NCBI GenBank assembly: GCA_965644265.1
Contig: OZ286461.1
Location: forward strand, 106,144,001 to 106,208,000
DNA: 64,000 nt
From: Glycera tridactyla
Lineage: Eukaryota
Reading direction: 5' to 3'
Shown in pieces: positions 1 through 32,916 of the stretch. A program made the translations under genes and the position numbers. Position 1 is the stretch's first letter, and each line of letters opens with the position of its first letter. The notes beneath the pieces are model-generated. The model worked only from the letters and a program-made list of their open reading frames with translations, made no database searches and was not told where the DNA came from.

Positions 1-1032
1 TATGCTCCTGTTTTTAAGGATTTTAGCCCTCTAAAATAAAAATAGAAAATAAATAAAATGATGAAAAATGCACAATTGTTATCATGAAATAAGTAAAATT
101 ATTTCGTGATTTTTGATATCCTTCTTTCCTTATTACTCCTTCTTTAAAGAAGACTGCCCCAGCTGTCTCCATGTCAATTGAATGTAAAACGTCTCTGTCT
201 TGTGTGTACCTCCTTTTCGAAGCCGCTCAACCCGAGTAATTTATTTTGATAATACAACAATAAATATATGAATAAATATGTGAATAATACATGCATTTTA
301 TTCACAACATGTGTACGGCATGTCTCAAATCATCGGGTCCAATATTCATACAACATCAGAATTTCACTCTTCATGCGTGTTTGTAATCGTGGCGTATGTA
401 TTATGCGTGTATACGTGTTTTCATGCTGTATATAACCATTAATAATAGAATTCACACACTACAAATATATTAACCAAATCCGACAATTTTGTAATTTATC
501 AAGAGTGTACCCCGTCGACACATCGATTTTTCACCAAGACACCGCCTAGAATCCGCGACCGTGATTGGTCTATTCGGATTTGCGCGTGTGTCCGTGGGGG
601 TAACTTCTTCAAAATTAAAACAATGTACTTGGATTCAATAAAAAACGCCGATTATGTGGCAAGTTGTCGAGAAACATTCCATATATTTGGTATTTCCTAA
701 CAGAATCATTTTCACACTGCAACTATCATGATAATGATGACTCAATCCTCTTATGGTAGCTGCTAAACTCATTCGTACGCAGCTGACTCATATGTTTGCC
801 GTCATCACCCGAGAATAAAACTAATGGGTTGTTTGGCACACAACATCTGTAACACATTCATGGTTTCACTTTCGTGACTAATGTTTATACCTCGTGTCAA
901 ACAAGGGTATCTTTGGTATATAAACGTCAATGTAGATTCAATTACCATCTGGGGTAGTTTATCAATATACCCTACCAAACTTTTCGTGGTATAATACCCC
1001 AAGTTCGGAGACTTGAGTCACACTTTGCAGCC

Positions 1033-1302
1033 ATGGATTGCCATTACTGTTTGCTGAAGCTGATCCTTGCTGGATTCCATAACGAAACTTATGTCCATTG
1101 CGTAAATGAGACATCTACGCCTACTATGCCCATTCTATCTACTGAGCATCCTCACATGGACAACGACCAGTCTGTTTGGATATGGGCAATAATACCCATA
1201 CTACTATTGCTGATCATGTTCGCCCTCGTCACATGGCGGGCGTATAGGAAGTTTACTATGGGTAAGTACCCTTTTTGCCAGTTAAAGCTATCAAATAAGT
1301 AA
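1033..1302 (+). CDS. Antisense small single-pass membrane protein (89 aa)
   Basis: Kozak-like GCCATGG; two N-E-T sequons; TM VWIWAIIPILLLLIMFALVTW followed by RAYRK; TATATAAA at 917-924; donor G|GTAAGT at 1261/1262. Confidence 0.55.
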   Translation: MDCHYCLLKLILAGFHNETYVHCVNETSTPTMPILSTEHPHMDNDQSVWIWAIIPILLLLIMFALVTWRAYRKFTMGKYPFCQLKLSNK

Positions 1303-1348
1303 CAATAAGTAACTATAAGTACTGATTACCCCTAATCTGTGTTTCTGC

Positions 1349-1780
1349 ATGTGTGTTATCTGGCATGGTGAATGTGATATGGCGGGTATAATCGTACTTG
1401 TATATTCAGACTTCTTCAGGATTTGCTTCCGAACTGATCTGACTACTAGCCAGTCGTTCGTACTAATTGTCATTGAAACTATCACCGTTACGAGCGGCTC
1501 GTGCCAATGTCTGTGTTATGACTTGTATATCGGGTTTCACGCGTTACCAGTCAAGCGTGTAATCGTAGTCGCCCAGACCTTGCCTGGCTTTCCCGCCGTC
1601 CGTAACATGATCGTTTCACTCTGCGCTGGTTCACTAGTCTCTAGGCGTTGTCGCCGAAACCATTGGATCAGCTTCGTTATAGTAGTAGAAGTCATATCCG
1701 GTATTTATTTTCTTCGCGCTTGCGAGGCGAGCATGATGAATGCTGAATCGGTCCCCACGGCTGTTCGTAACTCCATTTAG
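1349..1780 (+). CDS. Second antisense ORF downstream of env (143 aa, doubtful)
   Basis: Open for 143 codons and followed by AATAAA at 1939-1944. The V/I/C-rich composition resembles a shadow frame, but the in-register minus frame has 7 stops. Confidence 0.25.
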   Translation: MCVIWHGECDMAGIIVLVYSDFFRICFRTDLTTSQSFVLIVIETITVTSGSCQCLCYDLYIGFHALPVKRVIVVAQTLPGFPAVRNMIVSLCAGSLVSRRCRRNHWISFVIVVEVISGIYFLRACEASMMNAESVPTAVRNSI

Positions 1781-1956
1781 CCGAGGCGATCGTTAGGGCG
1801 ATGTTTGCATTGCTCGCCCAGCAGCATCTCCCCATGGGAATAAGTATTAGAACATGTATCTCAGTGGTAATCTATTTCTCGATCGTATTTCAATGGAAAC
1901 AATTGCTTGTGAAACAGAATAAGTTTTAATGATAAGATAATAAATCGTAAATCCTT

Positions 1957-2904
1957 CTATTGTGGACTAATAGCAGGCCTATTAGTCGTTTGCACCGCGA
2001 TTTCCCGTCTTTCCATTATTTCGTAAGAATCTTCATTATCAAGAGATGGTGGTGGTATATTCCTTAGAGCTGTTACTAGCGGCTCTATCGCTCGCGGATT
2101 TGATATGGGTGGTGGTAATGGCCTTTTCGCGAGTTTGTTCCAAGTAGTCTTCTTGTATCTGTATAGAAACCAGGCAGCTATCAATATAGCCGCTAGCAAC
2201 GATACTGCTATGACTAGCACAATGAGTATCGTTAACCAGAGACTTCTCTGCTTTCTCTGGTCGGTGTGGATCAGATTAAATGGATTAAGGGTCCTCCCTT
2301 TTAATATTTCGTCCATCGCTTTATCCAGATCCATTCCGAAAGATATCATATCATCTAGGCCCAACCTTTCATCTTCTGTAGTAATATCCAAGGAAGGTAT
2401 TGGGATGCTATCTATTGATTTCGCATACCTGTTCTTCGTGTATTCTACTAATAAATCCATATTTAGCAGTCTCGATAATGCTGGGAAATTTACAGGAAAA
2501 TCGATTTCCTGCGACATCTGTCTGTCTGTACATCCATGTATAATGGGTGATACCGATAATGTCCTTCCTTGTCCGTCTGTCAACGTAACCTGACATGCAC
2601 AATCCTGGCTGACCACACAAAACCTACATCCTTCCCTAACCATTAACGCTCTTGTTGGACAACCTATGGAAATGGTTTGAGCATTCATGACCAGCAACCT
2701 GCCTGGAGCCAATGAATGCACATCCATTATATCTTCGTCCATTTCCAGTCGGTAGGAACAGTGTTTTGTAATCTTTTCGTTGTCCCCAAGATATAAGCTC
2801 ATGGCGCATGTAGGGTGGTAGGTATCATGGATGGTGGTCATTTGTTTGCAATGCACTGTGTGTGATTTAGTACATTGGATGAAGTCCATTTCACTCATTT
2901 CCAA
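1957..2904 (-). CDS. env: Envelope glycoprotein, C-terminal part (Cys-rich ectodomain, TM anchor, cytoplasmic tail); continues the upstream env ORF in the -1 frame
   Basis: Cys pattern CTKSHTVHC...TCAMSLY...HC...CRFCVVSQDCAC; TM LWLTILIVLVIAVSLLAAILIAAWFLY followed by RYKK. Adding one T to the T4 run (2903-2906) gives ...NTRFLEMSEMDF... and one ~910-aa Env from ATG 4691. Confidence 0.9.
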   Translation of the reverse strand: MEMSEMDFIQCTKSHTVHCKQMTTIHDTYHPTCAMSLYLGDNEKITKHCSYRLEMDEDIMDVHSLAPGRLLVMNAQTISIGCPTRALMVREGCRFCVVSQDCACQVTLTDGQGRTLSVSPIIHGCTDRQMSQEIDFPVNFPALSRLLNMDLLVEYTKNRYAKSIDSIPIPSLDITTEDERLGLDDMISFGMDLDKAMDEILKGRTLNPFNLIHTDQRKQRSLWLTILIVLVIAVSLLAAILIAAWFLYRYKKTTWNKLAKRPLPPPISNPRAIEPLVTALRNIPPPSLDNEDSYEIMERREIAVQTTNRPAISPQ

Positions 2905-4748
2905 AACCTAGTATTGTCTATGGATATACCAAAAATCTTGTTGGGGGCCACAGGCCTAGTGACCAAACTTGCATTTAATGTGGCAGGTACGCTGAAAGTG
3001 GTTAGCTTGAATAGTTTGAAACTCGCATCCGTTGAACGTAGAGGGACCGTGATATGTATTACCAGCTTATTATTTCTCCATGAGTATTCTGGCTTTGCAT
3101 ATTTATAATACGATGCTGGCCTCATATTCGCAACCCTAAACACAATAAATTCCTTCCTTACATGCTCATCAAGGTCCACTAATGCCTTAAATAAGGTTTC
3201 CTCCGGTATTATTGTGGAAGATAGCTCATTTCGTAGCAAAGAACGTAGGCCGGTCATGAAATTGTTCATCTCCCTTTCTACGATTGTTAGGTCCTGTAGT
3301 AGGGTCGCTATCATTGAAACTGCGAATGATGTATATTGTACACTCGCATATAGTCTTTTGTTCAGATTTTCTATGATTGTTGAAAATTTGGTGTCCACAT
3401 GGTTAATAGCTTCTCCCATCTTTATGAGATGTTTGTTGTTGGTTTGTGCGAGTGCAACCGCTTGTTTTTGGAAGGTAATCACTTTGTCCGCCATATTAAA
3501 CTGATTTTCTTCGAGTGTTTTCAATGCCTTGTGTATGTGTTTAGCCTCATCTTGGGTTACGACGCCAAATAGAGAATTCAGAATTTTTCCTCCAAAATTG
3601 AACAATCCTCGTTCCTTCCTTCTTCTTGTATCATCCGGATTGTATTCTGTGGCTTTAACTTGTTCTACGATTATTCCCATTTCTCGTATGTCGGTTTCGG
3701 TTGTTTTCATGGCAAATACTACTGAGTCAATCAGTTCGATGAAGTCCCTATCGTCTGGTTTGACTTCCGAAGTCTCTCGTCTTTGCCTTCTCTCCTGCCT
3801 TTGTTCTGAAGTCTTGATTTTATTCAGTTGATTTACGTAGTATGTACGTAGCTCATTTGCCATGGATTGGAATCTCTCTGTCAAGTAGTGAACATGACCG
3901 CATATATAGCTTCCTTGCGATTCCCATTCAGAAGTACCTTTCGTTCCATGTCCTTTGCATTTGCCATCGTATGCATGCCTTATGTTTCTTAGGCTTCTCT
4001 CAGCTTCTTCTAATGTAACATTCCATCTTCCCCTGATAACTTCAGCTGGCGTTATCCTAGGATCATAGGGGTTTGTAATATTTTCTAATTTAGCTAGGGC
4101 TGTCCCAGCTTCCCATATACCCCTCATAATGATATTGTCCTGTCTGGGAGTATCTTCGACGTATAGAGCTTCCTTTAATGTATTCAAAGCTGCTTTGAGT
4201 GAGGTGATGGACCTTCCCATCTTGATTTTCTTCATTGTCGTAGATCTCTTCGTTCTGATTCGTGCATTCGCACCGTATTCCCATCGTGCGTTAGTCATCA
4301 TCTCATGTAGTAGATCCATGGATATGGCGGTTCTGGTTGCCTTGATTTCGTTCAAAATTCCTTTTAGGTACATACATGTTTCGTTGTTTGTGTCTTCTTC
4401 AATGTTTTCACCCAGACACTGATGCCATTGAAGGCACTCTCCATCCTGGTTTGTCGCACATTGAGTATGGTTGTTCACGTCTGTGAACATAGTAGGGATG
4501 TTCACAATGAACATCAGGTTGAAGGTAGCTGTAGTAGGGATATAGTTACCCTCTATAGGTGAAAAGTGAGCCCCATAGTTTAGCCTTTCAACCAGATTCA
4601 TTCCAGTTGAATCAAGAAAATCCTGGTTTTGGTCCACTTGTTGAGCATTTCCCATAGCTCCACACCACGAGAGTATCATAAGTAACATCATCAAAGAGCA
4701 ATCTTCTCCAATGATTCGTCTTTGGTGCCGTCTTGGTTTAATCACCAC
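2895..4748 (-). CDS. env: Envelope glycoprotein, N-terminal ~600 aa (class I fusion protein, baculovirus F/errantivirus Env type)
   Basis: Signal-like MMLLMILSWCGAMG (first ATG 4691); basic site followed by fusion-peptide-like RRRKER|GLFNFGGKILNSLFG; heptad region; ends at a TGA caused by a frameshift. Confidence 0.9.
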   Translation of the reverse strand: MVIKPRRHQRRIIGEDCSLMMLLMILSWCGAMGNAQQVDQNQDFLDSTGMNLVERLNYGAHFSPIEGNYIPTTATFNLMFIVNIPTMFTDVNNHTQCATNQDGECLQWHQCLGENIEEDTNNETCMYLKGILNEIKATRTAISMDLLHEMMTNARWEYGANARIRTKRSTTMKKIKMGRSITSLKAALNTLKEALYVEDTPRQDNIIMRGIWEAGTALAKLENITNPYDPRITPAEVIRGRWNVTLEEAERSLRNIRHAYDGKCKGHGTKGTSEWESQGSYICGHVHYLTERFQSMANELRTYYVNQLNKIKTSEQRQERRQRRETSEVKPDDRDFIELIDSVVFAMKTTETDIREMGIIVEQVKATEYNPDDTRRRKERGLFNFGGKILNSLFGVVTQDEAKHIHKALKTLEENQFNMADKVITFQKQAVALAQTNNKHLIKMGEAINHVDTKFSTIIENLNKRLYASVQYTSFAVSMIATLLQDLTIVEREMNNFMTGLRSLLRNELSSTIIPEETLFKALVDLDEHVRKEFIVFRVANMRPASYYKYAKPEYSWRNNKLVIHITVPLRSTDASFKLFKLTTFSVPATLNASLVTRPVAPNKIFGISIDNTRFWK

Positions 4749-4770
4749 TGCAACACATAAAGTGGGGATA
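4748..4770 (-). promoter_or_regulatory. Candidate env splice acceptor
   Basis: Minus strand CCCCACTTTATGTGTTGCAG|TGGTG lies at the start of the env frame. Spliced env mRNAs are established for gypsy-type errantiviruses. Confidence 0.5.
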
Positions 4771-5354
4771 GGGACCCATAAATTCCTGTGCCTAGGCCGA
4801 CTTAATTGACAATATAATGGATATTATAATTGTCTAGAACTTTTCTAACAAACTGCGATGTAATGTAGGGCGTTGTTATACAACAAGGATAACCATGAAT
4901 TATTTTATATAATAATTTATGATTTCTACTGTGTGTTTGGATCCGCTTCAATGGAATGTCGGCCTAATGCGGCATTTTTACAGGTTCCCTATTTTTCCCT
5001 ATTTTTCATAGGCGTTCGCCCTTCTTCTTTGCTCATTGACTTTATTGTTTCTTTCTGTGGCAACCGCTCCGGCTGACCACTACCCTTTGCGCGTCCGCAT
5101 TCCTACAAGTTGGTGAATTCACACCTTGACTTGTATATTTTCTGATACTCTCTCGTAATTCCCTGAGCTCCATTTGCTCGAAGCTGCTCCATCATTTGTT
5201 AATATGGGGGAGGTATGGGGTTACCTCCCTCTTCTCCCACCTCTTGGGCTCCCGTGGGACCTTCAGGCTTATTTCCTGGGGTTGCTCATCCCCCTTTACC
5301 CCTGATTTTCACCACTTGTGAATCTTACTCCGAAGAGTCAACATCGCATTTATC

Positions 5355-5975
5355 ATGTCTTCCCAAAATATTGTAGTGGCTTGTATCAGCCAGTTTTGTT
5401 CGAATGGGATAGTGGGTGTCCACTATGACGAAGAGCGAAGGGAGCTTCGCATTTATAGTGGAAGGGTCTCTACTAGTTACGACGACCACATTCTGGACGA
5501 AATTCGCAATTTCATCAGAACAAGGGAGATAGTGGGGTACTACTTTGATCAGGAACAATGTCGTGCCTCTCTAATCGTTAGGTTCAATGGTGGCATTGTT
5601 CTCAACAATGCCAGAGCCGGTGCCTATAGGCACAACGATGGGTGCTCCAATTCTTCTGAGGGGCACGAACATGAGCCTGATAGCCATGACCCACCATCTC
5701 CCCTTGTTTCGAATCAGGATCCCAGAAGGGTTCCTGTTCGAATGTGGCCGAATTTCGTTCACAGAAATTCAGCACCACGTATAGTGGTGCGTCCCAACAA
5801 CTTGTCCCGTTCTGAGGGACGCAACATCGTTGGTCGTGAGGTGAGTGTCTCTTTTATACTCCTTTTTGTCTTTATTATCGTGCTTTCAGCTCCTTCAGCA
5901 TCTTCCTCTTCTCTATACGAGCATTGTAGTCTCTTATGTGTTCTATTGGCACGATATCCGCCCGTAGCCATGTAG
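5355..5975 (+). CDS. Antisense accessory ORF of the retroelement (206 aa, unknown function)
   Basis: ATG-initiated. Internal repeat IVGVHYDEE / IVGYYFDQE with several third-position synonymous differences in this frame. Consensus donor GAG|GTGAGT in phase 0 after codon 162 (5840/5841). Confidence 0.5.
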   Translation: MSSQNIVVACISQFCSNGIVGVHYDEERRELRIYSGRVSTSYDDHILDEIRNFIRTREIVGYYFDQEQCRASLIVRFNGGIVLNNARAGAYRHNDGCSNSSEGHEHEPDSHDPPSPLVSNQDPRRVPVRMWPNFVHRNSAPRIVVRPNNLSRSEGRNIVGREVSVSFILLFVFIIVLSAPSASSSSLYEHCSLLCVLLARYPPVAM

Positions 5976-8900
5976 GCTTCTTGTCGCGCCACTCGCACAT
6001 GTATGAAACCTTTCCATTCTTCGTTGTGGACGTTATGACTTTTACTAGTTTCGACATGTCCGGTGCGCTTGCCTTGCTATCATTCTTCGTTTTGAAGCTG
6101 ATTTCTGGATCCATACTGACTGTATCCGTGTTTGACCTATTGTTTCTTTGCGCATGTTCTCTATTCACAAATGTTCTGCCTCGCTTTCGTCGCCTGGTTA
6201 CAGGCGGTATGTTTGGAAGGGTAGAAGTTTCAGATTCCACACTTTCTTTGTCTTTTTCTCTTCGCGATTCTGTATTTTTCTCTCTTTCTTCTGTATTTTG
6301 CGTATGTCCAATTGTCCGCTCCGAATTTGCATTCTGTCCGTCCTTCTTGGTCCTTTCGGTCCCTCTCAGGGTAGAATCAGCCTCCGGTGTGAATTTCTTC
6401 AGTCTGTTTTCTGGTATTAGATGTTTGAGGTTATGGTTGTGGATTTGCAGTGAATGAAATCCTGGCTTTGGTGTTGAGACTATGATGAAAGGCCCTTCAT
6501 ATTTCTGACTGACTTTGTATTGAGAGGGAACCCTAGGGGTTACTATTTTTGCCCAAACCATATCTCCTGGCTTGAAACCTTTGTATGTAACCTTCTTGGC
6601 TGTGTCATGACGCATTTTCATGTTCTCCGCATTTTTCCTGGCATTTCTGGCTGCTATGTGTCGTATAGCCATTAAATCAGGCCATATTGAAGGGAAAACT
6701 TCTTGTGGTGGGACATCTCGAATTAATGGAGGTTCTTTCGTTATGTCACCGGAGAGGGTTGGTTCCAGACCATACATGATTTCGTAGGGTGCAAATCCAT
6801 GAGATTTGATGGAAATATCATGAGACCAACGAACATGAGGCAAAAATTCCGTCCATGATTTTTCAGGAAACTCCATCATACATGCTCGTAGTGAGCAGAG
6901 AATACTAGAATGTAGTCGTTCTACTGCTGCATTGGCTTGAGGGTGCCAGGAGGTTATATACTGTAGTTTGATACTAAATTGTTCAGCCAAGTATTGGAAG
7001 GTTTTAGACGTGTGAGCTGCTGCTCTGTCTAATACGACCACCTTCGTAGGTCCAAATCGTTGAATCCACATCTTCATAAAATATGTAGCCAGGGTTTCAG
7101 CTTTTTCATTTGGAATGGTTTCAATCTCAAAGTGTTTTGAAAATCTGTCTACGATAACAAGTACTTTCAGTTCCTTATCTTTCGTTGGTGCAACCTTTAA
7201 GACATCCATGTGGATTATTTCAAATAATGAAGCTGGTGGTCTTAATAAAAGGGGTGTCTTTTTATTATTGTAGTCTCTTTTGGCTTGACCGCAGGCTTTG
7301 CAACTAGCCACAAATTTAGCCAAGTCTTCGTACATTCCTGGCCAGTAGAATCGTTGCCTGACGATTTGTAGTAGACTGTTGAAACCTCTGTGGGATCCAT
7401 GTGTTCCATGGTGAAATAATGCTGCTATTTCATACCTCCTAACATGTGGTAAGTATATCTGGTGAAATGTTTTATTGCTCGTATTGTCGTGGAATTTTCG
7501 GCATAAAATTCCGGAATTTGTAAGCAAATATTTGTCCTCCTCTGCCATGATTTTTCTTGCATGGGCAAGAGTCTCTGGCAGAGACTTATTCAATTTATAT
7601 TGATATAGGAATGACGAGTCTTTGTCAGTGGCTTGTTCCAGCGCCATTTTTCTTTCGTCTATCATATATTCTGTATACAACTCGATGCAAGAAGTTTCAT
7701 CCAGTAGTAAGGCTTCCTCGTATGAAATATCATCTGAATCCTCCAGGCCCAGTTGTTTTTCCTCTTTGTCGTACGATGAATCACCCTCACTGTCGGCTAT
7801 GTTTTCGATATCCGTCTCGGACATAACGTTCCCATCAGCGTCTTCCTCGCTGCTGGTACATGATTCTTCCGCGTGGCGGCGAGCGTCTCGCTGGAGGCCG
7901 GTTTTGGCGGGAAAGGTGGGCGTGGCACTTTTCTCTCTTTGACCATGTTGTTTATCCGTTGTGTCGAACATATCGAATCGCCGCTCTGTGGCTTCACACT
8001 CAGATGAATCTATTTCATTGCTGGGCTTGTATGGCTTTGTCCTGATTCCCATTAAACACTCCTTCTTTGTTACTGGTGATTCCAAGAATTCTGTAGTATT
8101 GATAAGACAATGGTTGTCACCTTCTTCATCCATTGATAACATGGGTTGTTCTACGTAGGTTATTCTAGATAAGGTGTCAGCTACAACATTTTCTTTGCCT
8201 GGTTTGTGCAGTACACGGATATTGAATTTATTCAAAAACATTTTATAACGAAAGAGCCTGCCGGTTTTAGTGGCCAGATTGTGTAAATATACGTTTGTCA
8301 AATTATCAGAAAATACTGTTATGTCTGTTTGAGAGCCCAACATTAATTCACATTGTTTCAATGATTCTACGAGTGCCAGGGCTTCTTTCTCATTTGAATG
8401 GTAATTTGCTTGTGATGGATTTAATGTTTTTGATATGAATGCTACAGGCCTGGTTACGTTTTCCTCGTCTTCCTGTGATATAACTGCTCCTACTGCTCTA
8501 CCGCTAGCATCTAGGTATACTGTAAATGGCTTGGCAGGGTCAGGATAGTATAATACCGCATTTTGGAGAAGGGAGGTTTTTATATTGTCTAATGCTTCCT
8601 GGCATTCCTCGGTCCAGATAAATTCATGATCTTTCTGTAGGAGTTTGTTTATTGGTGCAGCTATGGCCGCATATCCTCTTACAAATCTGCGATAGAAGTT
8701 GAGCGTACCCATCAACTGTCTGACTTCTTTGACATTATTAGGGGCTGGGAGCTTTATTAACGCTCCTAATTTGTTAGGATCGGCCTTTACCCCATCTTTG
8801 TTGAAAATATATCCCAGATATTTAACCTCGGATTTCATGAACATGGCCTTTGATGGCGATATACGTAGTCCCACTTGTCTAAGTCTCCACAGAAGTTGAC

Positions 8901-10812
8901 TCATAACTTCTAAGTGTTTTTCATATGTAGGGGTTGTAACAATAATATCGTCCATATATGATGTGACGTATTTTGAGTCCAAAGTGGCTAAACACCTAGA
9001 AATGATGCTTGAAAATATTTCTGGGCTTGAATTTAGGCCCATAGGTGTCTTTGTAAAGGAGTATTTTGCATTGCTGGTATTTATTGTACAAATATCAATA
9101 CTATCTGGTGCCAATTGAACTGCATAGAATGCTGAAGCCAGATCGACTACGGAGAAGACCTTGTTTTTCCCTGCCGCTAAAGTGGCTATAATATCGTTAA
9201 TCGTCGGTATTGGTGATTTTGAGGGAACTATCATTTTGTTCAAATTGGAAAAATCAACCACTAATCTGGGTTTGATGGGTTTACCATCATCATCATACTT
9301 GTATACTACGAAGGTGGGTACACCCAACATAGAATGTGATGGTTTCAATATTCCTGCCTCTACTAATTTTTGAATTTGTTCATTCAAGTCCTTCTCCTGC
9401 TGTGGAGGTAACTTGTATGCCCTCTGATTCACAACTGTTGCTTCTGGCTTTAGTTCTATTCTATGATACACATCTTGTATGACTGCCAACTCGCTCAGGT
9501 CTACGGCAAATGCCTCTCTGTTATTATCTAGAATAGACACTAATTCTTCTCTATACTCGTCAGCCGCAGGTTCCAACGATAATATATCGTCCCAAACGAT
9601 AGGTTTGAAAGTTCGAATCCTAGTCTGGTTCGAAATGTCTACTTCTGTTTGAGTTGATATTTCTCTACTGTTATCGTTTTCTTCCTCCACAACGAAAGGG
9701 GCAGAATAGTCCTGCCGTGGCCATAATACTTGTAATGAGTTTATTTGTTCACCGCTACATGGAAGTGGCGCTGATGGTCTCGCTAATGCTGACCGTTCGC
9801 CTATGTATACAGAACCTGGCATTCCTCTCTCATTAGATGCAGGTCTGGCCACGTTGGCTTGCGCAATGGTAATCCGCGCATCTGAGTCTATATATACGTT
9901 CTTTGAAGTTGGATTCGAAACAGATACCAAGAATGTATTCTTCTGGCTTCTGAAGGCGATTCCCGGAACCGTTGATAGTTGTGGGGTGTTTGTGATTATT
10001 TCATACGAAATATCTAAGGAATCTGGTTCTTTCATGTAATTTGGGGTTATTGTATTCTCACTATCAGCAGTCATATCGATATAACAAGAAATCATTGCGA
10101 TCTCCATAGGTTTCATAATCGTGGAATCTGATGCTCTCAATGTATACGAGCATTCTTTTACCGTTGTCATCAATACGCTGGTGATACCTCCTTCTAAATG
10201 CAATCTGCTCTCTGAATAGTCAATTTTCGCCGCAGTTTGCTGGAGAAATGGTACACCTAAGATGACTTGTAAGGGTATGGCTTCCACTACGAGGAATCTG
10301 ACTAATATTTCCTTACTATTGATAGTTATAGGAATGCTCACTGATCCTATCACTTTCATTTTCTGTGCCTGCGCATCGTATAGTTCTACCTCGTGTTTCG
10401 TGTCTATCTCTCCTCTCAAATCTAACTGTTTCAGCATGTCTTCTGTGATAAGATTAGTTGTAGCTCCTGTATCTACCATAGCCGCTATTTGTGTATGTTT
10501 GATATATATTTTAATAGAGTTAAGTGTACCCAACTTCTGACGTATTCGATTCCTATCACCTGTAGAGAGCGTCAATGATGAATTAACCGTTTCTCTTTTT
10601 GTTATGTTATCATCATTTATTCTTCTGACACTATACACATGCCTACTACTGTTTTCTACATTACTGCCACTACTAATATTTTTCTTATAAAATTTCACTA
10701 CAAATTCTAACAGATCGCAATGATCAGGGAGCGTATGCTCACAATCTATCCCTAATGGACAATCTACCCAATTAAATGCACTCGTGACCCTATTTATGAC
10801 ATGCCCTCTATC
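5875..10812 (-). CDS. pol: Pol polyprotein: aspartic protease, dUTPase-like domain, RT, RNase H, integrase, chromodomain-like C-terminus
   Basis: Uninterrupted frame of 1607 aa in the track plus 38 open codons back to the gag TAG. Motifs: VDTGA (PR), VVDLASAFY/TPMGL/YMDD (RT), DASG...NEKEALA...SDN...VADTLSR (RNase H), H-H-CKAC zinc finger, D-D-E triad (HMDV/VLDR/VERL), KYEGPF. Confidence 0.97.
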   Translation of the reverse strand, partial: DRGHVINRVTSAFNWVDCPLGIDCEHTLPDHCDLLEFVVKFYKKNISSGSNVENSSRHVYSVRRINDDNITKRETVNSSLTLSTGDRNRIRQKLGTLNSIKIYIKHTQIAAMVDTGATTNLITEDMLKQLDLRGEIDTKHEVELYDAQAQKMKVIGSVSIPITINSKEILVRFLVVEAIPLQVILGVPFLQQTAAKIDYSESRLHLEGGITSVLMTTVKECSYTLRASDSTIMKPMEIAMISCYIDMTADSENTITPNYMKEPDSLDISYEIITNTPQLSTVPGIAFRSQKNTFLVSVSNPTSKNVYIDSDARITIAQANVARPASNERGMPGSVYIGERSALARPSAPLPCSGEQINSLQVLWPRQDYSAPFVVEEENDNSREISTQTEVDISNQTRIRTFKPIVWDDILSLEPAADEYREELVSILDNNREAFAVDLSELAVIQDVYHRIELKPEATVVNQRAYKLPPQQEKDLNEQIQKLVEAGILKPSHSMLGVPTFVVYKYDDDGKPIKPRLVVDFSNLNKMIVPSKSPIPTINDIIATLAAGKNKVFSVVDLASAFYAVQLAPDSIDICTINTSNAKYSFTKTPMGLNSSPEIFSSIISRCLATLDSKYVTSYMDDIIVTTPTYEKHLEVMSQLLWRLRQVGLRISPSKAMFMKSEVKYLGYIFNKDGVKADPNKLGALIKLPAPNNVKEVRQLMGTLNFYRRFVRGYAAIAAPINKLLQKDHEFIWTEECQEALDNIKTSLLQNAVLYYPDPAKPFTVYLDASGRAVGAVISQEDEENVTRPVAFISKTLNPSQANYHSNEKEALALVESLKQCELMLGSQTDITVFSDNLTNVYLHNLATKTGRLFRYKMFLNKFNIRVLHKPGKENVVADTLSRITYVEQPMLSMDEEGDNHCLINTTEFLESPVTKKECLMGIRTKPYKPSNEIDSSECEATERRFDMFDTTDKQHGQREKSATPTFPAKTGLQRDARRHAEESCTSSEEDADGNVMSETDIENIADSEGDSSYDKEEKQLGLEDSDDISYEEALLLDETSCIELYTEYMIDERKMALEQATDKDSSFLYQYKLNKSLPETLAHARKIMAEEDKYLLTNSGILCRKFHDNTSNKTFHQIYLPHVRRYEIAALFHHGTHGSHRGFNSLLQIVRQRFYWPGMYEDLAKFVASCKACGQAKRDYNNKKTPLLLRPPASLFEIIHMDVLKVAPTKDKELKVLVIVDRFSKHFEIETIPNEKAETLATYFMKMWIQRFGPTKVVVLDRAAAHTSKTFQYLAEQFSIKLQYITSWHPQANAAVERLHSSILCSLRACMMEFPEKSWTEFLPHVRWSHDISIKSHGFAPYEIMYGLEPTLSGDITKEPPLIRDVPPQEVFPSIWPDLMAIRHIAARNARKNAENMKMRHDTAKKVTYKGFKPGDMVWAKIVTPRVPSQYKVSQKYEGPFIIVSTPKPGFHSLQIHNHNLKHLIPENRLKKFTPEADSTLRGTERTKKDGQNANSERTIGHTQNTEEREKNTESRREKDKESVESETSTLPNIPPVTRRRKRGRTFVNREHAQRNNRSNTDTVSMDPEISFKTKNDSKASAPDMSKLVKVITSTTKNGKVSYMCEWRDKKPTWLRADIVPIEHIRDYNARIEKRKMLKELKAR

Positions 10813-12522
10813 CTAGTGAGAAAAAGGGTTATTTGACCCTGTGTTTCCTGTCGGCCTTGGTCCCTGGGGAGCGTAACCCTGGGAATAGCCTTGGGAATAT
10901 CCTTGAGAATATCCCTGCTGATTTTGCCCATTATATTGTTGGCCTTGAGAATTAAATTGTCCCATGGTCTGGGTCTCTCTTACTCTATTGATGGCTTGAG
11001 CCATAAATCCGTCATGGTGCTGGGGATTAGTAATGTTGACATACGTCTTCATTACTTTGAAACAATTATTTGATGTATGCCCCGGCTTCAAACATGCTTC
11101 ACAGACAGGTGTATTTTCATCTATTTTCTTATTATAATTATTATATGTTCCAGGCCCAGGCGTGCCCCAGGAGGGAGGATCGGACGACGAGTTCGAACTC
11201 TGAGTCAAACTGGTGAGTCTCTTTTTACAGTCCCTGGCTATATGGCCTATCTTACCACAATGGTAGCATGTGATTTTTCTTCTAGTTTCTTGGTCCCCTG
11301 TTGGTCCATTATTTATTAACTCCCTTATTGCGTTCAAAAGTTCTTTGTTTTCGGGAGGTTCTTTCTCCTGTTTCTGAGGGACCTTTTGGTCCTCTTCCCT
11401 TTCTTTTATTATTGGTGTAGTTGATATGGCTGCAACTTTGTCCGTCAATTGCTGCATTTGTTCTGGTAAACTGGATAGTGCCTCTGAACTGGGCAATCTT
11501 TTATCCAATTTATCCATTACTACACTGATAGTCGCATCCATTGTCGACTCCGTAGCTATTTCTTCTAAATTTCCAGCGGTTTCTGCTGCTTCTAATACTG
11601 AATCCACGGTTAATGGATTTGCCATCAACATGTAGTTTTTAGCAACTGGGTTCAACCCAGATAATATAATACTTTTGTATTCACCAAATTGCGCTTGATT
11701 AAAGGCTTGTCCTTGTTTCAATTTGAATAAAAACCTACATTTATTCACTATTCTCATACAAAATTGTTTAGGTGTTTGTGCTGCACCCTGTTTGGTTTTA
11801 TACAATTTAGCCCTAAAGGCAGGCTCACTGTTTCCTTGTACACAGTATTCTGCAAGAAATCTTCTTTCTATTTCCTCGAAAGAAGTGTCTTTTGTCACAT
11901 GGACAGTGCAGTACCATTGCTTCACTGTGTCACTAAGGTTAAATGGAAAGTGTCTGACCTTTTCATAGTCAGACAGTCCGTGTAATGCACAGTATTCATT
12001 GAATAAGTCCAACCATTCAATGGGATTGTTTTTGGCTTGAAATTGCTGTACCTTGACTAGACTCTTATCCTTCACTACGAAGGTATGTTGAGCTTGAGGC
12101 ATAAAATTCGGTGGTTGTGAAGAAGGTGGGCCATGGATGGCCATGTTATGTTCCACCAGTCCTGTTTTGGGACGGGTACCTGCCCCTAATGGGACGTCCC
12201 TAGGCGTGCTTGTCCTTGCACCAAAAGATGTGTGATCAATGTTTGACAAAAATGGATCATAAGTTTCTGGTATATTATATGTGTAGCGAGGGGGAGGGTA
12301 ATATGCATTGTCAAAAGAATGTAATTCACCTGTTCTTTTTTGAGATGGGTTCCTTCTCGTGAATTCCCCTGGCGTAATTCCTTGATTCATATTCTCCTGT
12401 GTCATAATCCCTGTATTTCTGCTTTCTTGTAGTGTAATCCCTGAATTTCCTTTTTCTTGTGGTGTAATTCCTAAATTCCTGTTTCCCTTTTGTTTCAGAG
12501 CCTTCGAAAGCCGTCTATCCAC
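10813..12522 (-). CDS. gag: Gag (capsid-like domain plus two CCHC zinc knuckles)
   Basis: 569-aa frame. Retrotransposon-gag-like segment NNPIEWLDLFNEYCALHGLSDYEKVRHFPFNLSDTVKQWY; knuckles CYHCGKIGHIARDC and CEACLKPGHTSNNC. The track start is GTG, so the true start is uncertain. Confidence 0.92.
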   Translation of the reverse strand: MDRRLSKALKQKGNRNLGITPQEKGNSGITLQESRNTGIMTQENMNQGITPGEFTRRNPSQKRTGELHSFDNAYYPPPRYTYNIPETYDPFLSNIDHTSFGARTSTPRDVPLGAGTRPKTGLVEHNMAIHGPPSSQPPNFMPQAQHTFVVKDKSLVKVQQFQAKNNPIEWLDLFNEYCALHGLSDYEKVRHFPFNLSDTVKQWYCTVHVTKDTSFEEIERRFLAEYCVQGNSEPAFRAKLYKTKQGAAQTPKQFCMRIVNKCRFLFKLKQGQAFNQAQFGEYKSIILSGLNPVAKNYMLMANPLTVDSVLEAAETAGNLEEIATESTMDATISVVMDKLDKRLPSSEALSSLPEQMQQLTDKVAAISTTPIIKEREEDQKVPQKQEKEPPENKELLNAIRELINNGPTGDQETRRKITCYHCGKIGHIARDCKKRLTSLTQSSNSSSDPPSWGTPGPGTYNNYNKKIDENTPVCEACLKPGHTSNNCFKVMKTYVNITNPQHHDGFMAQAINRVRETQTMGQFNSQGQQYNGQNQQGYSQGYSQGYSQGYAPQGPRPTGNTGSNNPFSH

Positions 12523-12528
12523 AACGTT

Positions 12529-12885
12529 TCATACGGACTCCTCATCGTCACCATCATCACTGCTTAGATCCCCACCATCCTCTGCTTCCGTGTCCTCTTC
12601 ATCGTCTTCTTCAGCCGCTTTTTCCCGATCTTCTTCATTTTGCCGCTTGCCAACGTCTTCTGCAGCTTCTTCGCCATCTTTTCCTGCAATTTCTTGATTT
12701 TTGGACAATTCTTTCCCTGCTTTCTTCGTATTTTCGTCATCAGACATGCTTGCCTGCGCTGCTTGACTTTTAAATGTTACCTCGCCGCTACTATCACCTT
12801 CCAGATCACCTAGCTCTCTTCCTCCAGCCCGAACGATCGTCGTCGAACGTGGCGTGTCCGTATACGTTTTTGAAGACTGTTCCAT
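12529..12885 (-). CDS. Acidic 118-aa ORF upstream of, and in frame with, gag (separated by one TGA)
   Basis: ATG start, D/E-rich (EEDDEEDTEAEDGGDLSSDDGDDEESV*); continues in frame as *NVVDRRLSK into gag. Confidence 0.45.
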   Translation of the reverse strand: MEQSSKTYTDTPRSTTIVRAGGRELGDLEGDSSGEVTFKSQAAQASMSDDENTKKAGKELSKNQEIAGKDGEEAAEDVGKRQNEEDREKAAEEDDEEDTEAEDGGDLSSDDGDDEESV

Positions 12886-13187
12886 ATCATACCCGGATTC
12901 TCCACCATATATTATGATGGGCTACCGGTCTGTTGTAGTGTATGCTGCGTGGGGCGGTCGAAGGTACGGATCACCAAATTGCTCGCGTTCTCCTACGTTT
13001 CCTCCCGATGCCAATATGCTTGCAATAAACGATGTGGAGTCCACTTCTTCTTCTCGGTTTTCACTATGAATGACTAGTGTTAGAGTGTCACTATAATTCA
13101 CAAGAGTTCCTGTACGTGGGGGTAAGGTGTATACGAAGTGTAACACAACTCGCTCAAATAGTGATGTATAAAGCAGGCCGTTAAGCT

Positions 13188-13724
13188 CTACTCAGTGAGG
13201 TACTGGATCTTCATGGAGTCGATGTCGTAGCCGTCTGTCTGGTAGTCCGTCCCCTTCCTTGCCCCTGGGTATAACGTCTGGTAGTGCCCGAATTGCAGTA
13301 CCCCGATTTCTCGATTTTCTGGGGATTTTATAGTAAAGTGAGGTATGCCGTTTCTAAGCATATCTCGGCCAATTCTGACGTGTGAGTGGCATGAGTCGTA
13401 TTGGTGACTAATAAGGTGTCCGACATGATCGGGAGGTGCATTCCTCACCGTCTGGGACCATTTTTGGGTTCCTGGGACCCGGCAGTGCCGAGATTTTGAC
13501 CTACAAAACCTACGTCACTTGACTACAGTAAATAGGTCAATTTTGACGTAGGACCGGCAATTTGGCTTGTTCAATGCCTTATATAGAATGTTCTTGACCA
13601 TTTTCCAAGAAATCCGGTGGTTCTGGCGCTTGTAGCTCGTATGATAGCCGCTACTGCGCTTTGAACGTGGTACCCCCTCTAGGAAGTATTGGTCTATTAA
13701 TATTTGCAGCATCAGACTGGCCAT
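13188..13724 (-). pseudogene. Upstream leader ORF(s) of the retroelement, interrupted by a TGA at 13515-13517
   Basis: Track ORFs 13515-13724 and 13188-13448 share a frame and the gap between them is open. The distal part has coding-like codon usage (GTDYQTDGYDIDSMKIQY). Confidence 0.3.
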
Positions 13725-13810
13725 GGGCTAAGCCGCGCTCAGTCTTTTGCCCGCTAGCTTTCGTTCCAATCGGACGTATGTATTGCTAGTTCTACAGGAA
13801 TCATATATAT

Positions 13811-14663
13811 NNNNNNNNNNNNNNNNNNNNNNNNNNNNNNNNNNNNNNNNNNNNNNNNNNNNNNNNNNNNNNNNNNNNNNNNNNNNNNNNNNNNNNNNNN
13901 NNNNNNNNNNNNNNNNNNNNNNNNNNNNNNNNNNNNNNNNNNNNNNNNNNNNNNNNNNNNNNNNNNNNNNNNNNNNNNNNNNNNNNNNNNNNNNNNNNNN
14001 NNNNNNNNNNNNNNNNNNNNNNNNNNNNNNNNNNNNNNNNNNNNNNNNNNNNNNNNNNNNNNNNNNNNNNNNNNNNNNNNNNNNNNNNNNNNNNNNNNNN
14101 NNNNNNNNNNNNNNNNNNNNNNNNNNNNNNNNNNNNNNNNNNNNNNNNNNNNNNNNNNNNNNNNNNNNNNNNNNNNNNNNNNNNNNNNNNNNNNNNNNNN
14201 NNNNNNNNNNNNNNNNNNNNNNNNNNNNNNNNNNNNNNNNNNNNNNNNNNNNNNNNNNNNNNNNNNNNNNNNNNNNNNNNNNNNNNNNNNNNNNNNNNNN
14301 NNNNNNNNNNNNNNNNNNNNNNNNNNNNNNNNNNNNNNNNNNNNNNNNNNNNNNNNNNNNNNNNNNNNNNNNNNNNNNNNNNNNNNNNNNNNNNNNNNNN
14401 NNNNNNNNNNNNNNNNNNNNNNNNNNNNNNNNNNNNNNNNNNNNNNNNNNNNNNNNNNNNNNNNNNNNNNNNNNNNNNNNNNNNNNNNNNNNNNNNNNNN
14501 NNNNNNNNNNNNNNNNNNNNNNNNNNNNNNNNNNNNNNNNNNNNNNNNNNNNNNNNNNNNNNNNNNNNNNNNNNNNNNNNNNNNNNNNNNNNNNNNNNNN
14601 NNNNNNNNNNNNNNNNNNNNNNNNNNNNNNNNNNNNNNNNNNNNNNNNNNNNNNNNNNNNNNN
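13811..14663. other. Assembly gap (others: 15534-15705, 22038-22528, 22890-23096, 43024-43222, 60023-60219)
   Basis: Runs of N. Confidence 1.
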
Positions 14664-17600
14664 ATATACACAGGTAAACAAAACGAACATCGTTGTGGGT
14701 AGATTATTGATCAGCTCATGGAGTAGGTGAAGAAAAGCTTTGCAGGTATGGCAGCGTGACATACGAGGTTTCCTCACAAAAAGGCAGATGCTGCCTGGTG
14801 ATTGAGTGTGCCTCGATGACACACATTCCTGTGATACCCATAATTTGCCTCTGTTGTTCCTGCCTAATGAGGATATATGTAAGACAGATGTAAGACAGGA
14901 TTGCTGGTCTTGACCTCATTTCATGACTGGATGAATACGATAATACTTGGGTAATTCATTCATGCTAGAATTGTCTGTGATGGATCAGATTAGTATAATA
15001 ACATTACCTGACTCTTTCGTCCCTATTTCCATCATCCGCGGTATATAAGTCTAGCGTACGATTCATCAGGTAACGAACAAAGTATAGCGTCCTAGATTGA
15101 TATGAAACGACCACTAGTTGATACGGCCGTTAGTGCAAAAGAGATGAATAGTGACATTCGGATGAGGAGTTTCAGGTTAATTGGGTAGACTACAGCCATC
15201 AGGAGTGCCAGATGGTGGCATGAATGTGAAAGTGTCGCATGATGATTGTACATGTACTCGGTGGAATGTCACGTGAGCCTGTCTAGCCATTGTCGCTTCC
15301 TCACCCACACCCACAATCCCAGAACACACGAACCCAAAAACAACCAGTCTACACTGGACACCAACCAACAACAGGTGCCACCCACAGCGTAAGCCAATAA
15401 ACAGACCATGCTAAGTGTGCCAACCACAATCTGTCTCTACTTGTGCCTACTTTTGCCAACAATTCCAGAATTATACAAACGAATACACTAAAGCCTCAAT
15501 AAACATTGGGGACCCTCTCCATTGTGTTCGTTCNNNNNNNNNNNNNNNNNNNNNNNNNNNNNNNNNNNNNNNNNNNNNNNNNNNNNNNNNNNNNNNNNNN
15601 NNNNNNNNNNNNNNNNNNNNNNNNNNNNNNNNNNNNNNNNNNNNNNNNNNNNNNNNNNNNNNNNNNNNNNNNNNNNNNNNNNNNNNNNNNNNNNNNNNNN
15701 NNNNNTAGCGTGTTTTCCTCCTGGAGCTCATGGGCACTTCACATAGGCGTGTTCATCAAAACCTAGAAAGAATTGAGGTCATAAAGTCAAGGTGGAAAAG
15801 CCAGGCTGGACAAACATGTCTTGGTACTAGGCACTGAACGAAGGTGCAAACCTAAATTTCGGAAGGAGAGAGTCGTGTCGTATGAGGTTGGAGCAGCCCA
15901 AAAATTGGGAGGCGTTCCTATTTATGAGAATGTATTCAAGTGTGAGAGGGTGTTTCGCCGAGAAGACTGTTTTTATATGTAGCCCTCTTGGCTATGTTTG
16001 CGCACGCCGAATGAATGCAATAGCAAATAGAAGCGAGATGATCCAGGAACTGTCTATAGAGATGTAGGGGGAGCCGAGATCGGAACCCTCTTGTAGGCAA
16101 GCAGCATGCACAGCGAGCTCTAGTTTACAAGTCTGTTATTCCTTCAACCATAGCAAACATGGTACAAACAGTACAAACAAGTTACAAACAGGCTATGGGA
16201 AAGAATGAGAAGCTGCTGGATGAATCTACCTAGTTGACCACGTAGTAGAGACAGATGATCTGCCTGCTCTGTCTCTCTCTCCTCATATTCATAGGTTTCA
16301 CTAGGGGTTGCAGCACCACCACATCTTAAATACAATGGAATCAATAGAAATCGCCCTCCGGTGTTTCAGCGTTAGGGAAAATGCCACATAGATGTGAGTT
16401 TACCCATGAATTTCGTTGTGATATAGAGCAGTTGCGTCAGGTAGCAGGGCAAGCCGTGGGGAGCCTTTAGGCGAGGGGTGGGATCTCGAATATTATTCGG
16501 GTTTCAACAGGAAGCCAGTGAATTTATTCTCAGGATAGATTGTTAGTCATGAGCAGCCTTTCTTGCTGAAGGTAATTGTAAATCCAGTAGACCCAGGAAA
16601 ATTAGTTGGATATATCTGCATTGACTATTCAGGGGTATCGTGATAGGGATTCTGACGAAATCTTGACGGATTTGTTAGATATCATATGGATCAGATGCCC
16701 TCTAGAAATCAATACCAGATGTTGTTGATTGTGCCTATGAATCATCGTGATTAGTTGGGGATTAGTCTGGATCAAAATGTGTATAGGGCGCCTATGTGGG
16801 GACGTCCTGCAGCTAATCAGATGATGTCATACAACTGAAGACCTGACATTCACCATATTCTGTATGTGAAGTTGCTGGATGTGTTCAAGCACGACTCATC
16901 GGCACAGAATTCGTAGTACGAAATGGAATAGACGGAGAGACATTTGTCAAATCAATTATGATCGAACAAGATGCCATGGTCACGGCAAAGTTCGACACAT
17001 TCTGAGCCTCTGTCCAGAGTAAATATTGGTACACAATGATGGATTTGTGTATGTGTGGGAGAGGGGGCAGAACTCAAGTGCAACAATATAAACACAATAG
17101 GGTTGGTAGATGAATATGGTATCAAAATTACGACAAGGTCATAGAAATATGTCATGCAAACCACATTCCTCATTCTATACATATGATGCACATTTGTTTC
17201 TAGTAACGGAAAGACGACTGCTCCATTGTTACACTGGTAATGTCGAGAGGCCCAACCCTCACAAACCTATGATGAAATTGATGATTTGCTATGCGATTTC
17301 ATAACTGTATGACATTTTTTGTCACTTCCTTCCAAACTTCAATGACAGTATATAATATCCCTACTCATGCACATGTTGCGTTGTTGAATGTGTAAGACAT
17401 ATGTGAATATTGTGATGATGATTTGTAGACATATTATATGATGGCGGAATGAGATAGTATGATATAGATTGATGAGCTTCTCCTCAACTTTTCCCTCCAG
17501 GCATCGGCTCGTAATGAGTTGCTTGTGATTGAGACATCAATGCACAGGATTTGCGTAGAAAGACTCTATCACGGATCACAAAAGCGTTGTATCAAGTATA

Positions 17601-19480: not shown

Positions 19481-19523
19481 ACACATACACACAAACACAC
19501 GCATGCACACATGCACACGCACA

Positions 19524-19562
<39 letters not shown>

Positions 19563-19572
19563 ACACACACAC
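19481..19572. repeat. (CA)n microsatellite
   Basis: Directly visible. Confidence 0.95.
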
Positions 19573-22879: not shown

Positions 22880-23099
22880 CAATGACCGTNNNNNNNNNNN
22901 NNNNNNNNNNNNNNNNNNNNNNNNNNNNNNNNNNNNNNNNNNNNNNNNNNNNNNNNNNNNNNNNNNNNNNNNNNNNNNNNNNNNNNNNNNNNNNNNNNNN
23001 NNNNNNNNNNNNNNNNNNNNNNNNNNNNNNNNNNNNNNNNNNNNNNNNNNNNNNNNNNNNNNNNNNNNNNNNNNNNNNNNNNNNNNNNNNNNNNNNCAG

Positions 23100-32831: not shown

Positions 32832-32832
<1 letters not shown>

Positions 32833-32915
<83 letters not shown>

Positions 32916-32916
32916 G
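32833..32916. repeat. (TCTG)n microsatellite
   Basis: Directly visible. Confidence 0.95.

What the first reader, a model, noticed from the sequence alone, without database searches (positions are those of the whole stretch)
800..13810. Complex, nearly intact invertebrate retrovirus-like element: Gypsy pol, F-type env, chromodomain-like IN tail and accessory ORFs on both strands
Seen: gag with two CCHC knuckles, a stop-free ~1645-codon pol, a ~910-aa env broken by one base, extra ORFs upstream of gag, and two antisense coding units. Established: Drosophila errantiviruses have F-type env but lack knuckles and chromodomains, while chromoviruses normally lack env. Inference: this combination looks like a complex-retrovirus-style genome in a Ty3/Gypsy lineage, may be undescribed, and inserted recently enough to stay intact.
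Basis: partly seen in the sequence, partly recalled or inferred. Interest (0 to 1): 0.9.

Follow-up and report, generated by a model that had tools for sequence, protein, structure and literature searches.

The report
Envelope-carrying Ty3/gypsy retroelement with chromodomain
This is one nearly complete copy of an envelope-carrying Ty3/gypsy retrovirus-like element, a kind already catalogued across invertebrate animals, and its supposed accessory genes do not hold up.

Summary
The core observation is real. The element lies on the minus strand. It has a gag with two CCHC knuckles. Pol is a stop-free 1645-codon frame with protease, RT, one RNase H and integrase. Pol ends in a module that folds as a chromodomain. 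Env is F-type, with Pfam Baculo_F above its curated cut-off. Pol is open. Env carries one frameshift. Gag's frame carries one internal stop.

The "complex retrovirus" reading is not supported. The ORF just upstream of gag lies in gag's own frame and looks like a cut-off N-terminal part of gag. The other upstream ORF scores as non-coding. The plus-strand ORFs have no family or structure match and score like random ORFs on codon usage. Two of them fit the stop-poor antisense frame of coding DNA. The 206-codon one has no credible homologue among 1.84 billion representative proteins.

F-type env together with a Pol chromodomain is already described for Cnidaria, Mollusca and Annelida (Chary and Hayashi, PMC13524379).

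No LTR pair, PBS or PPT could be shown; an assembly gap, which I did not fill, covers the 5' side. Insertion age and env linkage in other copies are untested. I referred the fetch of the relatives' DNA.

Verdict: a new, divergent member of a known kind (nearest Pol 55% identical).

The parts
10813..12885 (-). gag, given as one part. It comprises a body with two CCHC zinc knuckles (11227-11268 and 11062-11103) and an acidic N-terminal extension in the same frame that starts at an ATG. The frame holds one internal stop codon.
   Evidence: Pfam zf-CCHC E=2.6e-9. Two knuckles found by pattern, and the frame relations and stop count were computed. PDB hits only to retroviral nucleocapsid knuckles. 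The extension has a codon-usage score of 0.28, against 0.14 for known genes and 0.06 for random ORFs.
5875..10812 (-). pol, a 1645-codon stop-free frame that starts directly after gag's TAG stop and is in gag's frame. Domains: protease 10237-10512, RT 8803-9276, RNase H 8170-8541, acidic disordered insert 7714-8109, helical/three-strand module 7456-7698, IN zinc domain 7276-7449, IN core 6940-7221, chromodomain-fold tail 5878-6057.
   Evidence: Pfam. Motifs and coordinates. Relatives align from protease to the last residues in one frame. AF2 and Foldseek for RNase H and for the tail.
5878..6057 (-). C-terminal chromodomain-fold module of Pol: three beta strands followed by a helix.
   Evidence: AF2 with an 11-sequence alignment gives pLDDT of about 94. 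Foldseek against PDB: nearly all of the top 50 are chromodomains or chromo-shadow domains (HP1, Polycomb, CBX7, SUV39H1, Rhino, MPP8, cpSRP43); the close superpositions have target TM 0.66-0.75 and rmsd 1.2-2.0 A; E-values are 0.03-0.14. Weak sequence hit to the cpSRP43 chromodomain, E=0.005. The module is conserved at the very C-terminus of all close relatives. The Pfam Chromo model does not hit.
1957..4748 (-). env, F-type, given as one part and broken by one frameshift. Features: signal-like hydrophobic start 4650-4691, basic cleavage-like motif 3609-3626, hydrophobic fusion-peptide-like stretch 3558-3608, Baculo_F match 2919-3761, transmembrane anchor 2155-2253.
   Evidence: Pfam Baculo_F E=1e-9, 38 bits against a cut-off of 24.1, profile positions 90-348 of 609. 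Motifs, hydrophobic segment and coordinates. No Pfam hit for the C-terminal piece.
4749..5874 (-). pol-env spacer of about 1.1 kb with no sense-strand ORF of 80 codons or more. Its composition departs from the rest of the element at about 5400-5800.
   Evidence: ORF table. Composition profile. No terminal repeats or target-site-like duplications that would mark a nested insertion.
5355..5975 (+). 206-codon antisense ORF in the spacer, overlapping the end of pol. Its status is open, and it is probably not a gene.
   Evidence: Its length is unusual under dinucleotide shuffles (P about 0.007). There is no Pfam hit. Only one weak hit, made of eight short stretches, among 1.84 billion representatives. 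No credible PDB hit. Its codon-usage score of 0.06-0.08 equals that of random ORFs.
12886..13810 (-). Leader upstream of gag, running into the N gap. It holds one 86-codon GTG-started ORF (13188-13448) that scores as non-coding.
   Evidence: Sequence. No Pfam hit. Codon score 0.008. N run at 13811-14663, which I did not fill.
800..1956 (-). Region downstream of env: 3' untranslated region and possibly the 3' LTR. The 3' boundary is not determined. It holds plus-strand ORFs 1033-1302 and 1349-1780.
   Evidence: No repeat of this region elsewhere in the window. The A-rich bias of the element's strand fades below about 1000-1300. The ORFs have no family hit above cut-off and score as random ORFs.

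Best explanation
This is one genomic copy of an env-carrying Ty3/gypsy LTR retroelement, an endogenous retrovirus-like element of the kind that Chary and Hayashi call 'ancient errantiviruses'. It sits on the minus strand of a repeat-rich eukaryotic region.

Shown here:
- gag has two nucleocapsid knuckles.
- pol encodes protease, RT, a single RNase H and integrase, with the catalytic motifs in place.
- The integrase C-terminus folds as a chromodomain.
- env is an F-type (class I) fusion glycoprotein gene with a signal-like start, a basic cleavage-like motif directly before a hydrophobic fusion-peptide-like stretch, and a membrane anchor.

Inferred:
- Because pol follows gag's TAG in the same frame with no overlap, Gag-Pol would be made by read-through of that stop, as in murine leukaemia virus.
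- Env would come from a subgenomic, probably spliced, message spanning the 1.1-kb spacer.
- The chromodomain would guide integration towards marked chromatin, as in chromoviruses.
- Env would allow transfer between cells, as in Drosophila gypsy and ZAM.

As it stands, this copy cannot make a full-length anchored Env because of one frameshift, and gag's long frame is cut by one stop.

The extra ORFs are not accessory genes. The one next to gag is gag's own N-terminal part. The rest are most likely chance ORFs, favoured by the stop-poor antisense frame of A-rich coding DNA.
For: Gene order and strand. Pfam domains. Motifs. Same-frame gag/pol, with 2337 codons from 12885 to 5875 holding only two internal stops. 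Close relatives match Pol end to end in one frame. Chromodomain fold. Single RNase H fold followed by a disordered insert and a small helix/three-strand module, matching the 'RNase H + mini domain' bridge described for the ancient group. Baculo_F match and env features. Published catalogue with the same architecture, including chromodomain-carrying clades. Against accessory genes.
Against: No LTR pair, PBS or PPT was found, so the element's ends and LTR class rest on inference. No env relative was recovered: two word-index searches came back blank, so env linkage to this pol lineage rests on this one copy. No stable RNA structure was predicted after gag's stop (z=0.7; pseudoknots are not modelled), so read-through is unproven. 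Four plus-strand ORFs of 140 codons or more were seen, against 0.15 expected under a dinucleotide null. The codon-aware null explains only those inside pol and env.
Confidence: 0.8

Rival explanations
1. This is a complex retrovirus-like genome after all. The 206-codon plus-strand ORF in the pol-env spacer, and perhaps the small membrane-protein-like ORF at 1033-1302, would be lineage-specific accessory genes, the former read antisense like HBZ or ASP of human retroviruses.
For: The ORF's length is unusual under dinucleotide shuffles (P about 0.007). The spacer has no sense ORF. The strand bias is locally reversed at about 5400-5800, as an antisense coding region would produce. The 89-codon ORF has a hydrophobic span followed by basic residues.
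Against: No Pfam, PDB or credible library homologue, although the relatives' contigs were gene-called into the same library family. Codon-usage scores equal those of random ORFs. The last part of the 206-codon ORF is simply the antisense of pol. Many ORFs were inspected in a 64-kb scan, so multiple testing applies.
Confidence: 0.1
2. This is a chimera: env (with or without the spacer) does not belong to this gag-pol but was joined to it by a nested insertion, recombination or an assembly error.
For: The 1.1-kb spacer is long and compositionally different in part. No env relative could be tied to the Pol relatives. The assembly has gaps nearby.
Against: Env has the same strand, the canonical order and the same A-rich bias in env as in gag-pol. 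Pol is complete to its last residue, and env starts with its own signal-like peptide. No LTR, terminal repeat or duplication lies between pol and env. The published elements show exactly this order, and env co-diverges with pol.
Confidence: 0.07
3. This is an old, decaying relic rather than a recent insertion: the open frames are a chance survival, and the LTRs are lost or truncated.
For: No LTR is visible on either side. There are two disabling changes.
Against: 1645 stop-free codons in pol, plus long open pieces in gag and env, are not expected after long neutral decay. All catalytic motifs are kept. The 5' LTR may simply lie in the gap.
Confidence: 0.15

Closest known systems
Chromodomain-carrying 'ancient errantiviruses' of Cnidaria, Mollusca and Annelida (Chary and Hayashi, eLife 2026, PMC13524379; preprint 2023)
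   Same: gag-pol-env order, Ty3/gypsy pol, F-type (or gB-type) env with cleavage site, fusion peptide and anchor, a single RNase H plus a small bridge domain, and a chromodomain after integrase.
   Different: I could not place this element in their tree or match it to any listed element, because no supplement text is held. Pol here is unusually long, with a 130-residue acidic insert. The pol-env spacer exceeds the 1000-nt gap of their first filter. This copy's env is not intact.
Insect errantiviruses (Drosophila gypsy, ZAM, Idefix, 17.6)
   Same: Ty3/gypsy gag-pol-env with a baculovirus-F-like env.
   Different: According to the paper, the insect group has a duplicated 'pseudo' RNase H; only one RNase H fold is seen here.
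Chromoviruses (for example Tf1, MAGGY, Sushi, CRM)
   Same: A chromodomain at the C-terminus of integrase, and Ty3/gypsy pol.
   Different: They normally lack env. The Pfam Chromo model hits true chromoviruses among the search results (P0051, P0070, P0105) but not this tail. The aromatic cage was not assessed.
Bdelloid rotifer LTR retrotransposons with captured extra ORFs (Rodriguez, Kenefick and Arkhipova 2017, PMC5408684)
   Same: Invertebrate retrovirus-like elements, one lineage with a paramyxovirus-like F env, and small transmembrane ORFs have been discussed.
   Different: Their extra ORFs are recognisable enzymes (dUTPase, GDSL lipase, DEDDy exonuclease) shared among families. The extra ORFs here have no homologues.
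Gammaretrovirus gag-pol expression (murine leukaemia virus)
   Same: gag and pol lie in one frame, separated by a single UAG.
   Different: No read-through structure could be shown here, and the likeness is in layout only.

Membership tests
Ty3/gypsy (Metaviridae) LTR retroelements | pol domain order protease-RT-RNase H-integrase | tested here: met
   Pfam domains in that order, with DTG, YMDD and HHCC motifs.
Ty3/gypsy (Metaviridae) LTR retroelements | Flanking long terminal repeats with PBS and PPT | tested here: inconclusive
   No direct repeat between the two flanks. No tRNA gene in the window to test a PBS against. No convincing PPT. The 5' side is an unfilled N gap.
Ty3/gypsy (Metaviridae) LTR retroelements | RT/IN phylogenetic placement inside the group | not tested
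   All 120 listed Pol hits carry the Ty3/gypsy-type Pfam set. No reference tree was built, because reference elements of animals were not fetched.
Env-carrying Ty3/gypsy ('errantiviruses' sensu Chary and Hayashi), ancient group | gag, pol and an F- or gB-type env on one strand in that order | tested here: met
Env-carrying Ty3/gypsy ('errantiviruses' sensu Chary and Hayashi), ancient group | F-type ENV with signal peptide, furin-type site, hydrophobic fusion peptide and transmembrane anchor | tested here: met
   Baculo_F is above its curated cut-off. The motifs and hydrophobic anchor are read from the sequence. The fold of env itself was not predicted.
Env-carrying Ty3/gypsy ('errantiviruses' sensu Chary and Hayashi), ancient group | Bridge region with one canonical RNase H plus a small 'mini' domain, not a duplicated pseudo-RNase H | tested here: met
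   AF2 gives one beta1-3/alpha/beta4/alpha/beta5/alpha fold, then a disordered insert, then helices and three short strands. [quoted passage not shown] I judged the match to the published 'mini' domain from the paper's description only.
Env-carrying Ty3/gypsy ('errantiviruses' sensu Chary and Hayashi), ancient group | All three ORFs uninterrupted, and several near-identical copies in the genome | tested here: not met
   Env has one frameshift and gag's long frame has one stop. Copy number could not be tested, because the window's proteins are absent from the collections.
Insect Errantivirus lineage (gypsy, ZAM, 17.6) | Duplicated pseudo-RNase H in the bridge; gag without knuckles; no chromodomain | tested here: not met
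   A single RNase H fold, two knuckles and a chromodomain fold.
Chromoviruses | Chromodomain C-terminal to integrase | tested here: met
   Met by predicted fold and structure search. Sequence support is weak and Pfam Chromo is negative.
Chromoviruses | Placement in the chromovirus branch of the RT tree; intact aromatic cage | not tested
   No reference sequences were brought in, and Foldseek gave no residue-level alignment.
Complex retroviruses or retroelements with accessory genes | Extra ORFs that are conserved, have homologues or show a coding signature | tested here: not met
   No family, structure or library homologue. Codon scores equal those of random ORFs. The ORF next to gag is in gag's frame.
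Complex retroviruses or retroelements with accessory genes | Transcripts or peptides from the extra ORFs | not testable with these tools
   No expression data are available.

The most novel reading that the evidence does not exclude
The 1.1-kb pol-env spacer, whose strand bias is locally reversed, encodes a lineage-specific antisense protein (the 206-codon ORF). That would make this a Ty3/gypsy element with a genuine antisense accessory gene in an animal host.
Probability: 0.1. Interest if true: 0.6.

Novelty: new member of a known kind. Interest (0 to 1): 0.3.

Why it matters
It adds a divergent lineage to the recently recognised, animal-wide group of envelope-carrying Ty3/gypsy elements: the nearest Pol is 55% identical, and only a handful of relatives exist among 5.8 billion proteins. 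This lineage has some uncommon traits: gag and pol in one frame, a very long Pol with a disordered acidic insert, a long pol-env spacer, and a chromodomain that profile models miss. It also shows how long antisense ORFs arise in A-rich retroelement genes and can be mistaken for accessory genes.

Tried and rejected
- LTR search by exact-seed repeats and by self-BLASTN with words of 11 and 7 found nothing linking the two flanks.
- PBS and PPT by eye: a TGG-started stretch near gag's ATG and several short purine runs were seen, none convincing, and there are no tRNA genes in the window to compare with.
- A change-point analysis of strand bias to fix the 3' end was not sharp.
- Two word-index protein searches with env (the whole N-terminal piece, then its conserved part) were blank. 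This says little, because the index needs shared 5-mers.
- PDB sequence search with the env piece was blank.
- Env compared with the abalone protein that its source names 'Pol, env' (P0048) showed no similarity.
- Exact look-ups of the window's proteins, to find other copies or the host, found none on record.
- Cluster look-up of the relatives returned no names or accessions, so the host stays unknown.
- RNA fold after gag's stop showed no more structure than shuffles.
- Rfam over the whole window gave no family.
- The nested-insertion test of the spacer found no terminal repeats.
- The paper's supplements are not held as text.
- My codon-usage score favours any stop-free frame, so I calibrated it against random ORFs from shuffles. 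It cannot exclude a gene with unusual codon usage.
Full report
**Layout.** The element lies on the minus strand. In its own 5'-to-3' direction the order is:
- the N gap at 13811-14663, which I did not fill or look up;
- a 0.9-kb leader;
- gag (10813-12885);
- pol (5875-10812);
- a 1.1-kb spacer;
- env (1957-4748);
- at least 0.7 kb of further sequence with the same strand bias.

The element's strand is A-rich from about 1200 to the gap. This bias is absent below about 1000 and beyond the gap. The rest of the window holds a LINE-like ORF2, an RT fragment, a 72-nt satellite and microsatellites. The setting is therefore a repeat-rich eukaryotic chromosome. The host could not be named.

**gag.** Pfam finds zf-CCHC. 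A pattern search finds two C-x2-C-x4-H-x4-C knuckles. PDB sequence hits are to retroviral nucleocapsid knuckles only. No capsid family was detected by sequence.

One frame runs for 2337 codons from the ATG at 12885 to pol's stop, with only two internal stops. One of these is gag's own terminator. The acidic ORF's codon-usage score is 0.28, against 0.14 +/- 0.04 for chunks of the known genes and 0.06 +/- 0.05 for random ORFs. I read it as gag's N-terminal part, cut off by one stop. A true upstream ORF, or a leaky stop, is not excluded.

The other upstream ORF (13188-13448, GTG start) has no family hit and scores 0.008, like non-coding DNA.

**pol.** Pfam gives protease, RVT_1, RT_RNaseH, Integrase_H2C2 and rve, and the DTG, YMDD and HHCC motifs are present.

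- Six protein clusters (P0001-P0006) are 49-55% identical over the RT-to-integrase region that was searched. The next best reach 44% or less, over about half of it.
- By tBLASTN these relatives match the window from the protease to the last residues of Pol in a single frame, so pol is complete at both ends.
- pol starts directly after gag's TAG in the same frame, so Gag-Pol by stop read-through is the simplest inference. No stable structure was predicted downstream (z=0.7), and the tool does not model pseudoknots.

**Chromodomain.** The last 60 or so residues are conserved at the extreme C-terminus of all relatives. AlphaFold2 on the last 90 residues, with an 11-row alignment, gives three strands and a helix at pLDDT of about 94.

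Foldseek against the PDB returns almost only chromodomains and chromo-shadow domains. The close superpositions have target TM 0.66-0.75 and rmsd 1.2-2.0 A, at probability 1.00. The E-values are modest (0.03-0.14), as is usual for so small a domain. phmmer gives a weak hit to the cpSRP43 chromodomain (E=0.005). The Pfam Chromo model does not hit. I did not assess the aromatic cage.

**Bridge region.** AlphaFold2 on Pol residues 690-1090, with a 36-row alignment, shows one canonical RNase H fold, a roughly 130-residue low-confidence acidic insert, and then four helices and three short strands just before the integrase zinc domain. Foldseek matches the first part to reverse transcriptases that carry an RNase H domain (cauliflower mosaic virus, MLV, foamy virus, Ty3) and to bacterial and archaeal RNase H. 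This fits the 'RNase H plus mini domain' bridge that the paper gives for its ancient group. It does not fit the duplicated pseudo-RNase H of the insect group.

**env.** The gene is in two pieces in different frames, which means one frameshift, with no stop inside either piece.

- The N-terminal piece matches Pfam Baculo_F at 38 bits against a cut-off of 24.1, over profile positions 90-348 of 609.
- It has a signal-like hydrophobic start, and a basic motif directly followed by a hydrophobic fusion-peptide-like stretch.
- The C-terminal piece is cysteine-rich and carries the only strong hydrophobic anchor.
- I searched the pieces apart and never joined them.
- No relative of env was recovered. 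The index behind the two protein searches needs shared 5-mers, so this blank is weak evidence.

**Plus-strand ORFs.** Four ATG-started ORFs of 140 codons or more occur, against 0.15 expected from dinucleotide shuffles. That null ignores codon structure. On the antisense strand of pol and env, one frame has 1.6-2.6 stops per 100 codons, against about 6-8 in the other two frames.

- With codons permuted, the 173-codon ORF inside pol is unremarkable (P=0.10). The 162-codon ORF inside env is marginal (P=0.018, before correcting for four genes tested).
- The 206-codon ORF (5355-5975) lies mostly in the spacer and remains unusual in length (P of about 0.007).
- The 206-codon ORF has no Pfam hit and no credible PDB hit. 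Against 1.84 billion representatives it gives a single E=3e-4 hit made of eight short stretches.
- Its codon score equals that of random ORFs.
- The strand bias is locally reversed at about 5400-5800. I cannot explain this, and it keeps a small probability for a real antisense gene or a foreign fragment. No terminal repeats mark an insertion.
- The ORFs at 1033-1302 and 1349-1780 have no supported family and score as random ORFs. The former looks like a small membrane protein by eye only.

**Ends and age.** No LTR pair, PBS or PPT could be shown. If a 5' LTR exists, it lies within or beyond the gap. Insertion age is therefore unknown, and 'recent' rests only on the open frames.

**Comparison with what is known.** Chary and Hayashi (PMC13524379; preprint 2023) report more than 1500 env-carrying Ty3/gypsy elements across most animal phyla, with F-type or gB-type env. 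Env co-diverges with pol in their data. They describe a clade in Cnidaria, Mollusca and Annelida whose Pol ends in a chromodomain. Extra ORFs in invertebrate LTR elements are also on record (PMC5408684). The architecture is thus catalogued. What is new here is a divergent lineage with some uncommon traits.

The ORF tables, my tool queries for the separate pieces and notebook entry 1 hold ORF bounds that bracket the breaks. I record that slip here and have deleted nothing.
- The alignment tool printed consensus lines of its own accord.
- I took no contig for human.
- I made no spliced model.
- I did not fetch the DNA of the relatives.

Noticed in passing
window 35681-39133 (+) and 55323-56471 (-): A 1150-codon ORF with endonuclease/exonuclease/phosphatase and RVT_1 domains, which is a LINE-like ORF2, and a separate 382-codon RT fragment.
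   Followed up: partly
window 46708-47528: A tandem array of a 72-nt unit, 11.4 copies at 94% identity, open on both strands.
   Followed up: no
window 7714-8109 (-): An acidic, predicted-disordered insert of about 130 residues between RNase H and integrase. The relatives are longer still in the linker regions.
   Followed up: partly
window 12405-12477 (-): A 30-nt repeat, 2.4 copies, inside the N-terminal part of gag. It gives a repeated short peptide motif.
   Followed up: no
window 5400-5800: The strand bias (AT skew) is near zero or reversed, and G+C rises to 0.49, inside the pol-env spacer. This is unlike the rest of the element, and I have no explanation for it.
   Followed up: partly
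window 19480-19572, 33603-33684, 54155-54243, 41846-42040, 32832-32916, 62096-62159: Many microsatellites: (CA)n, (TG)n, (ACT)n, (GTCT)n and (TCTG)n. They account for most self-matches in the window.
   Followed up: no
whole window: There are six N runs (13811-14663, 15534-15705, 22038-22528, 22890-23096, 43024-43222, 60023-60219), no tRNA gene and no Rfam family. The long ORFs listed across N runs are artefacts of N being translated as X.
   Followed up: yes
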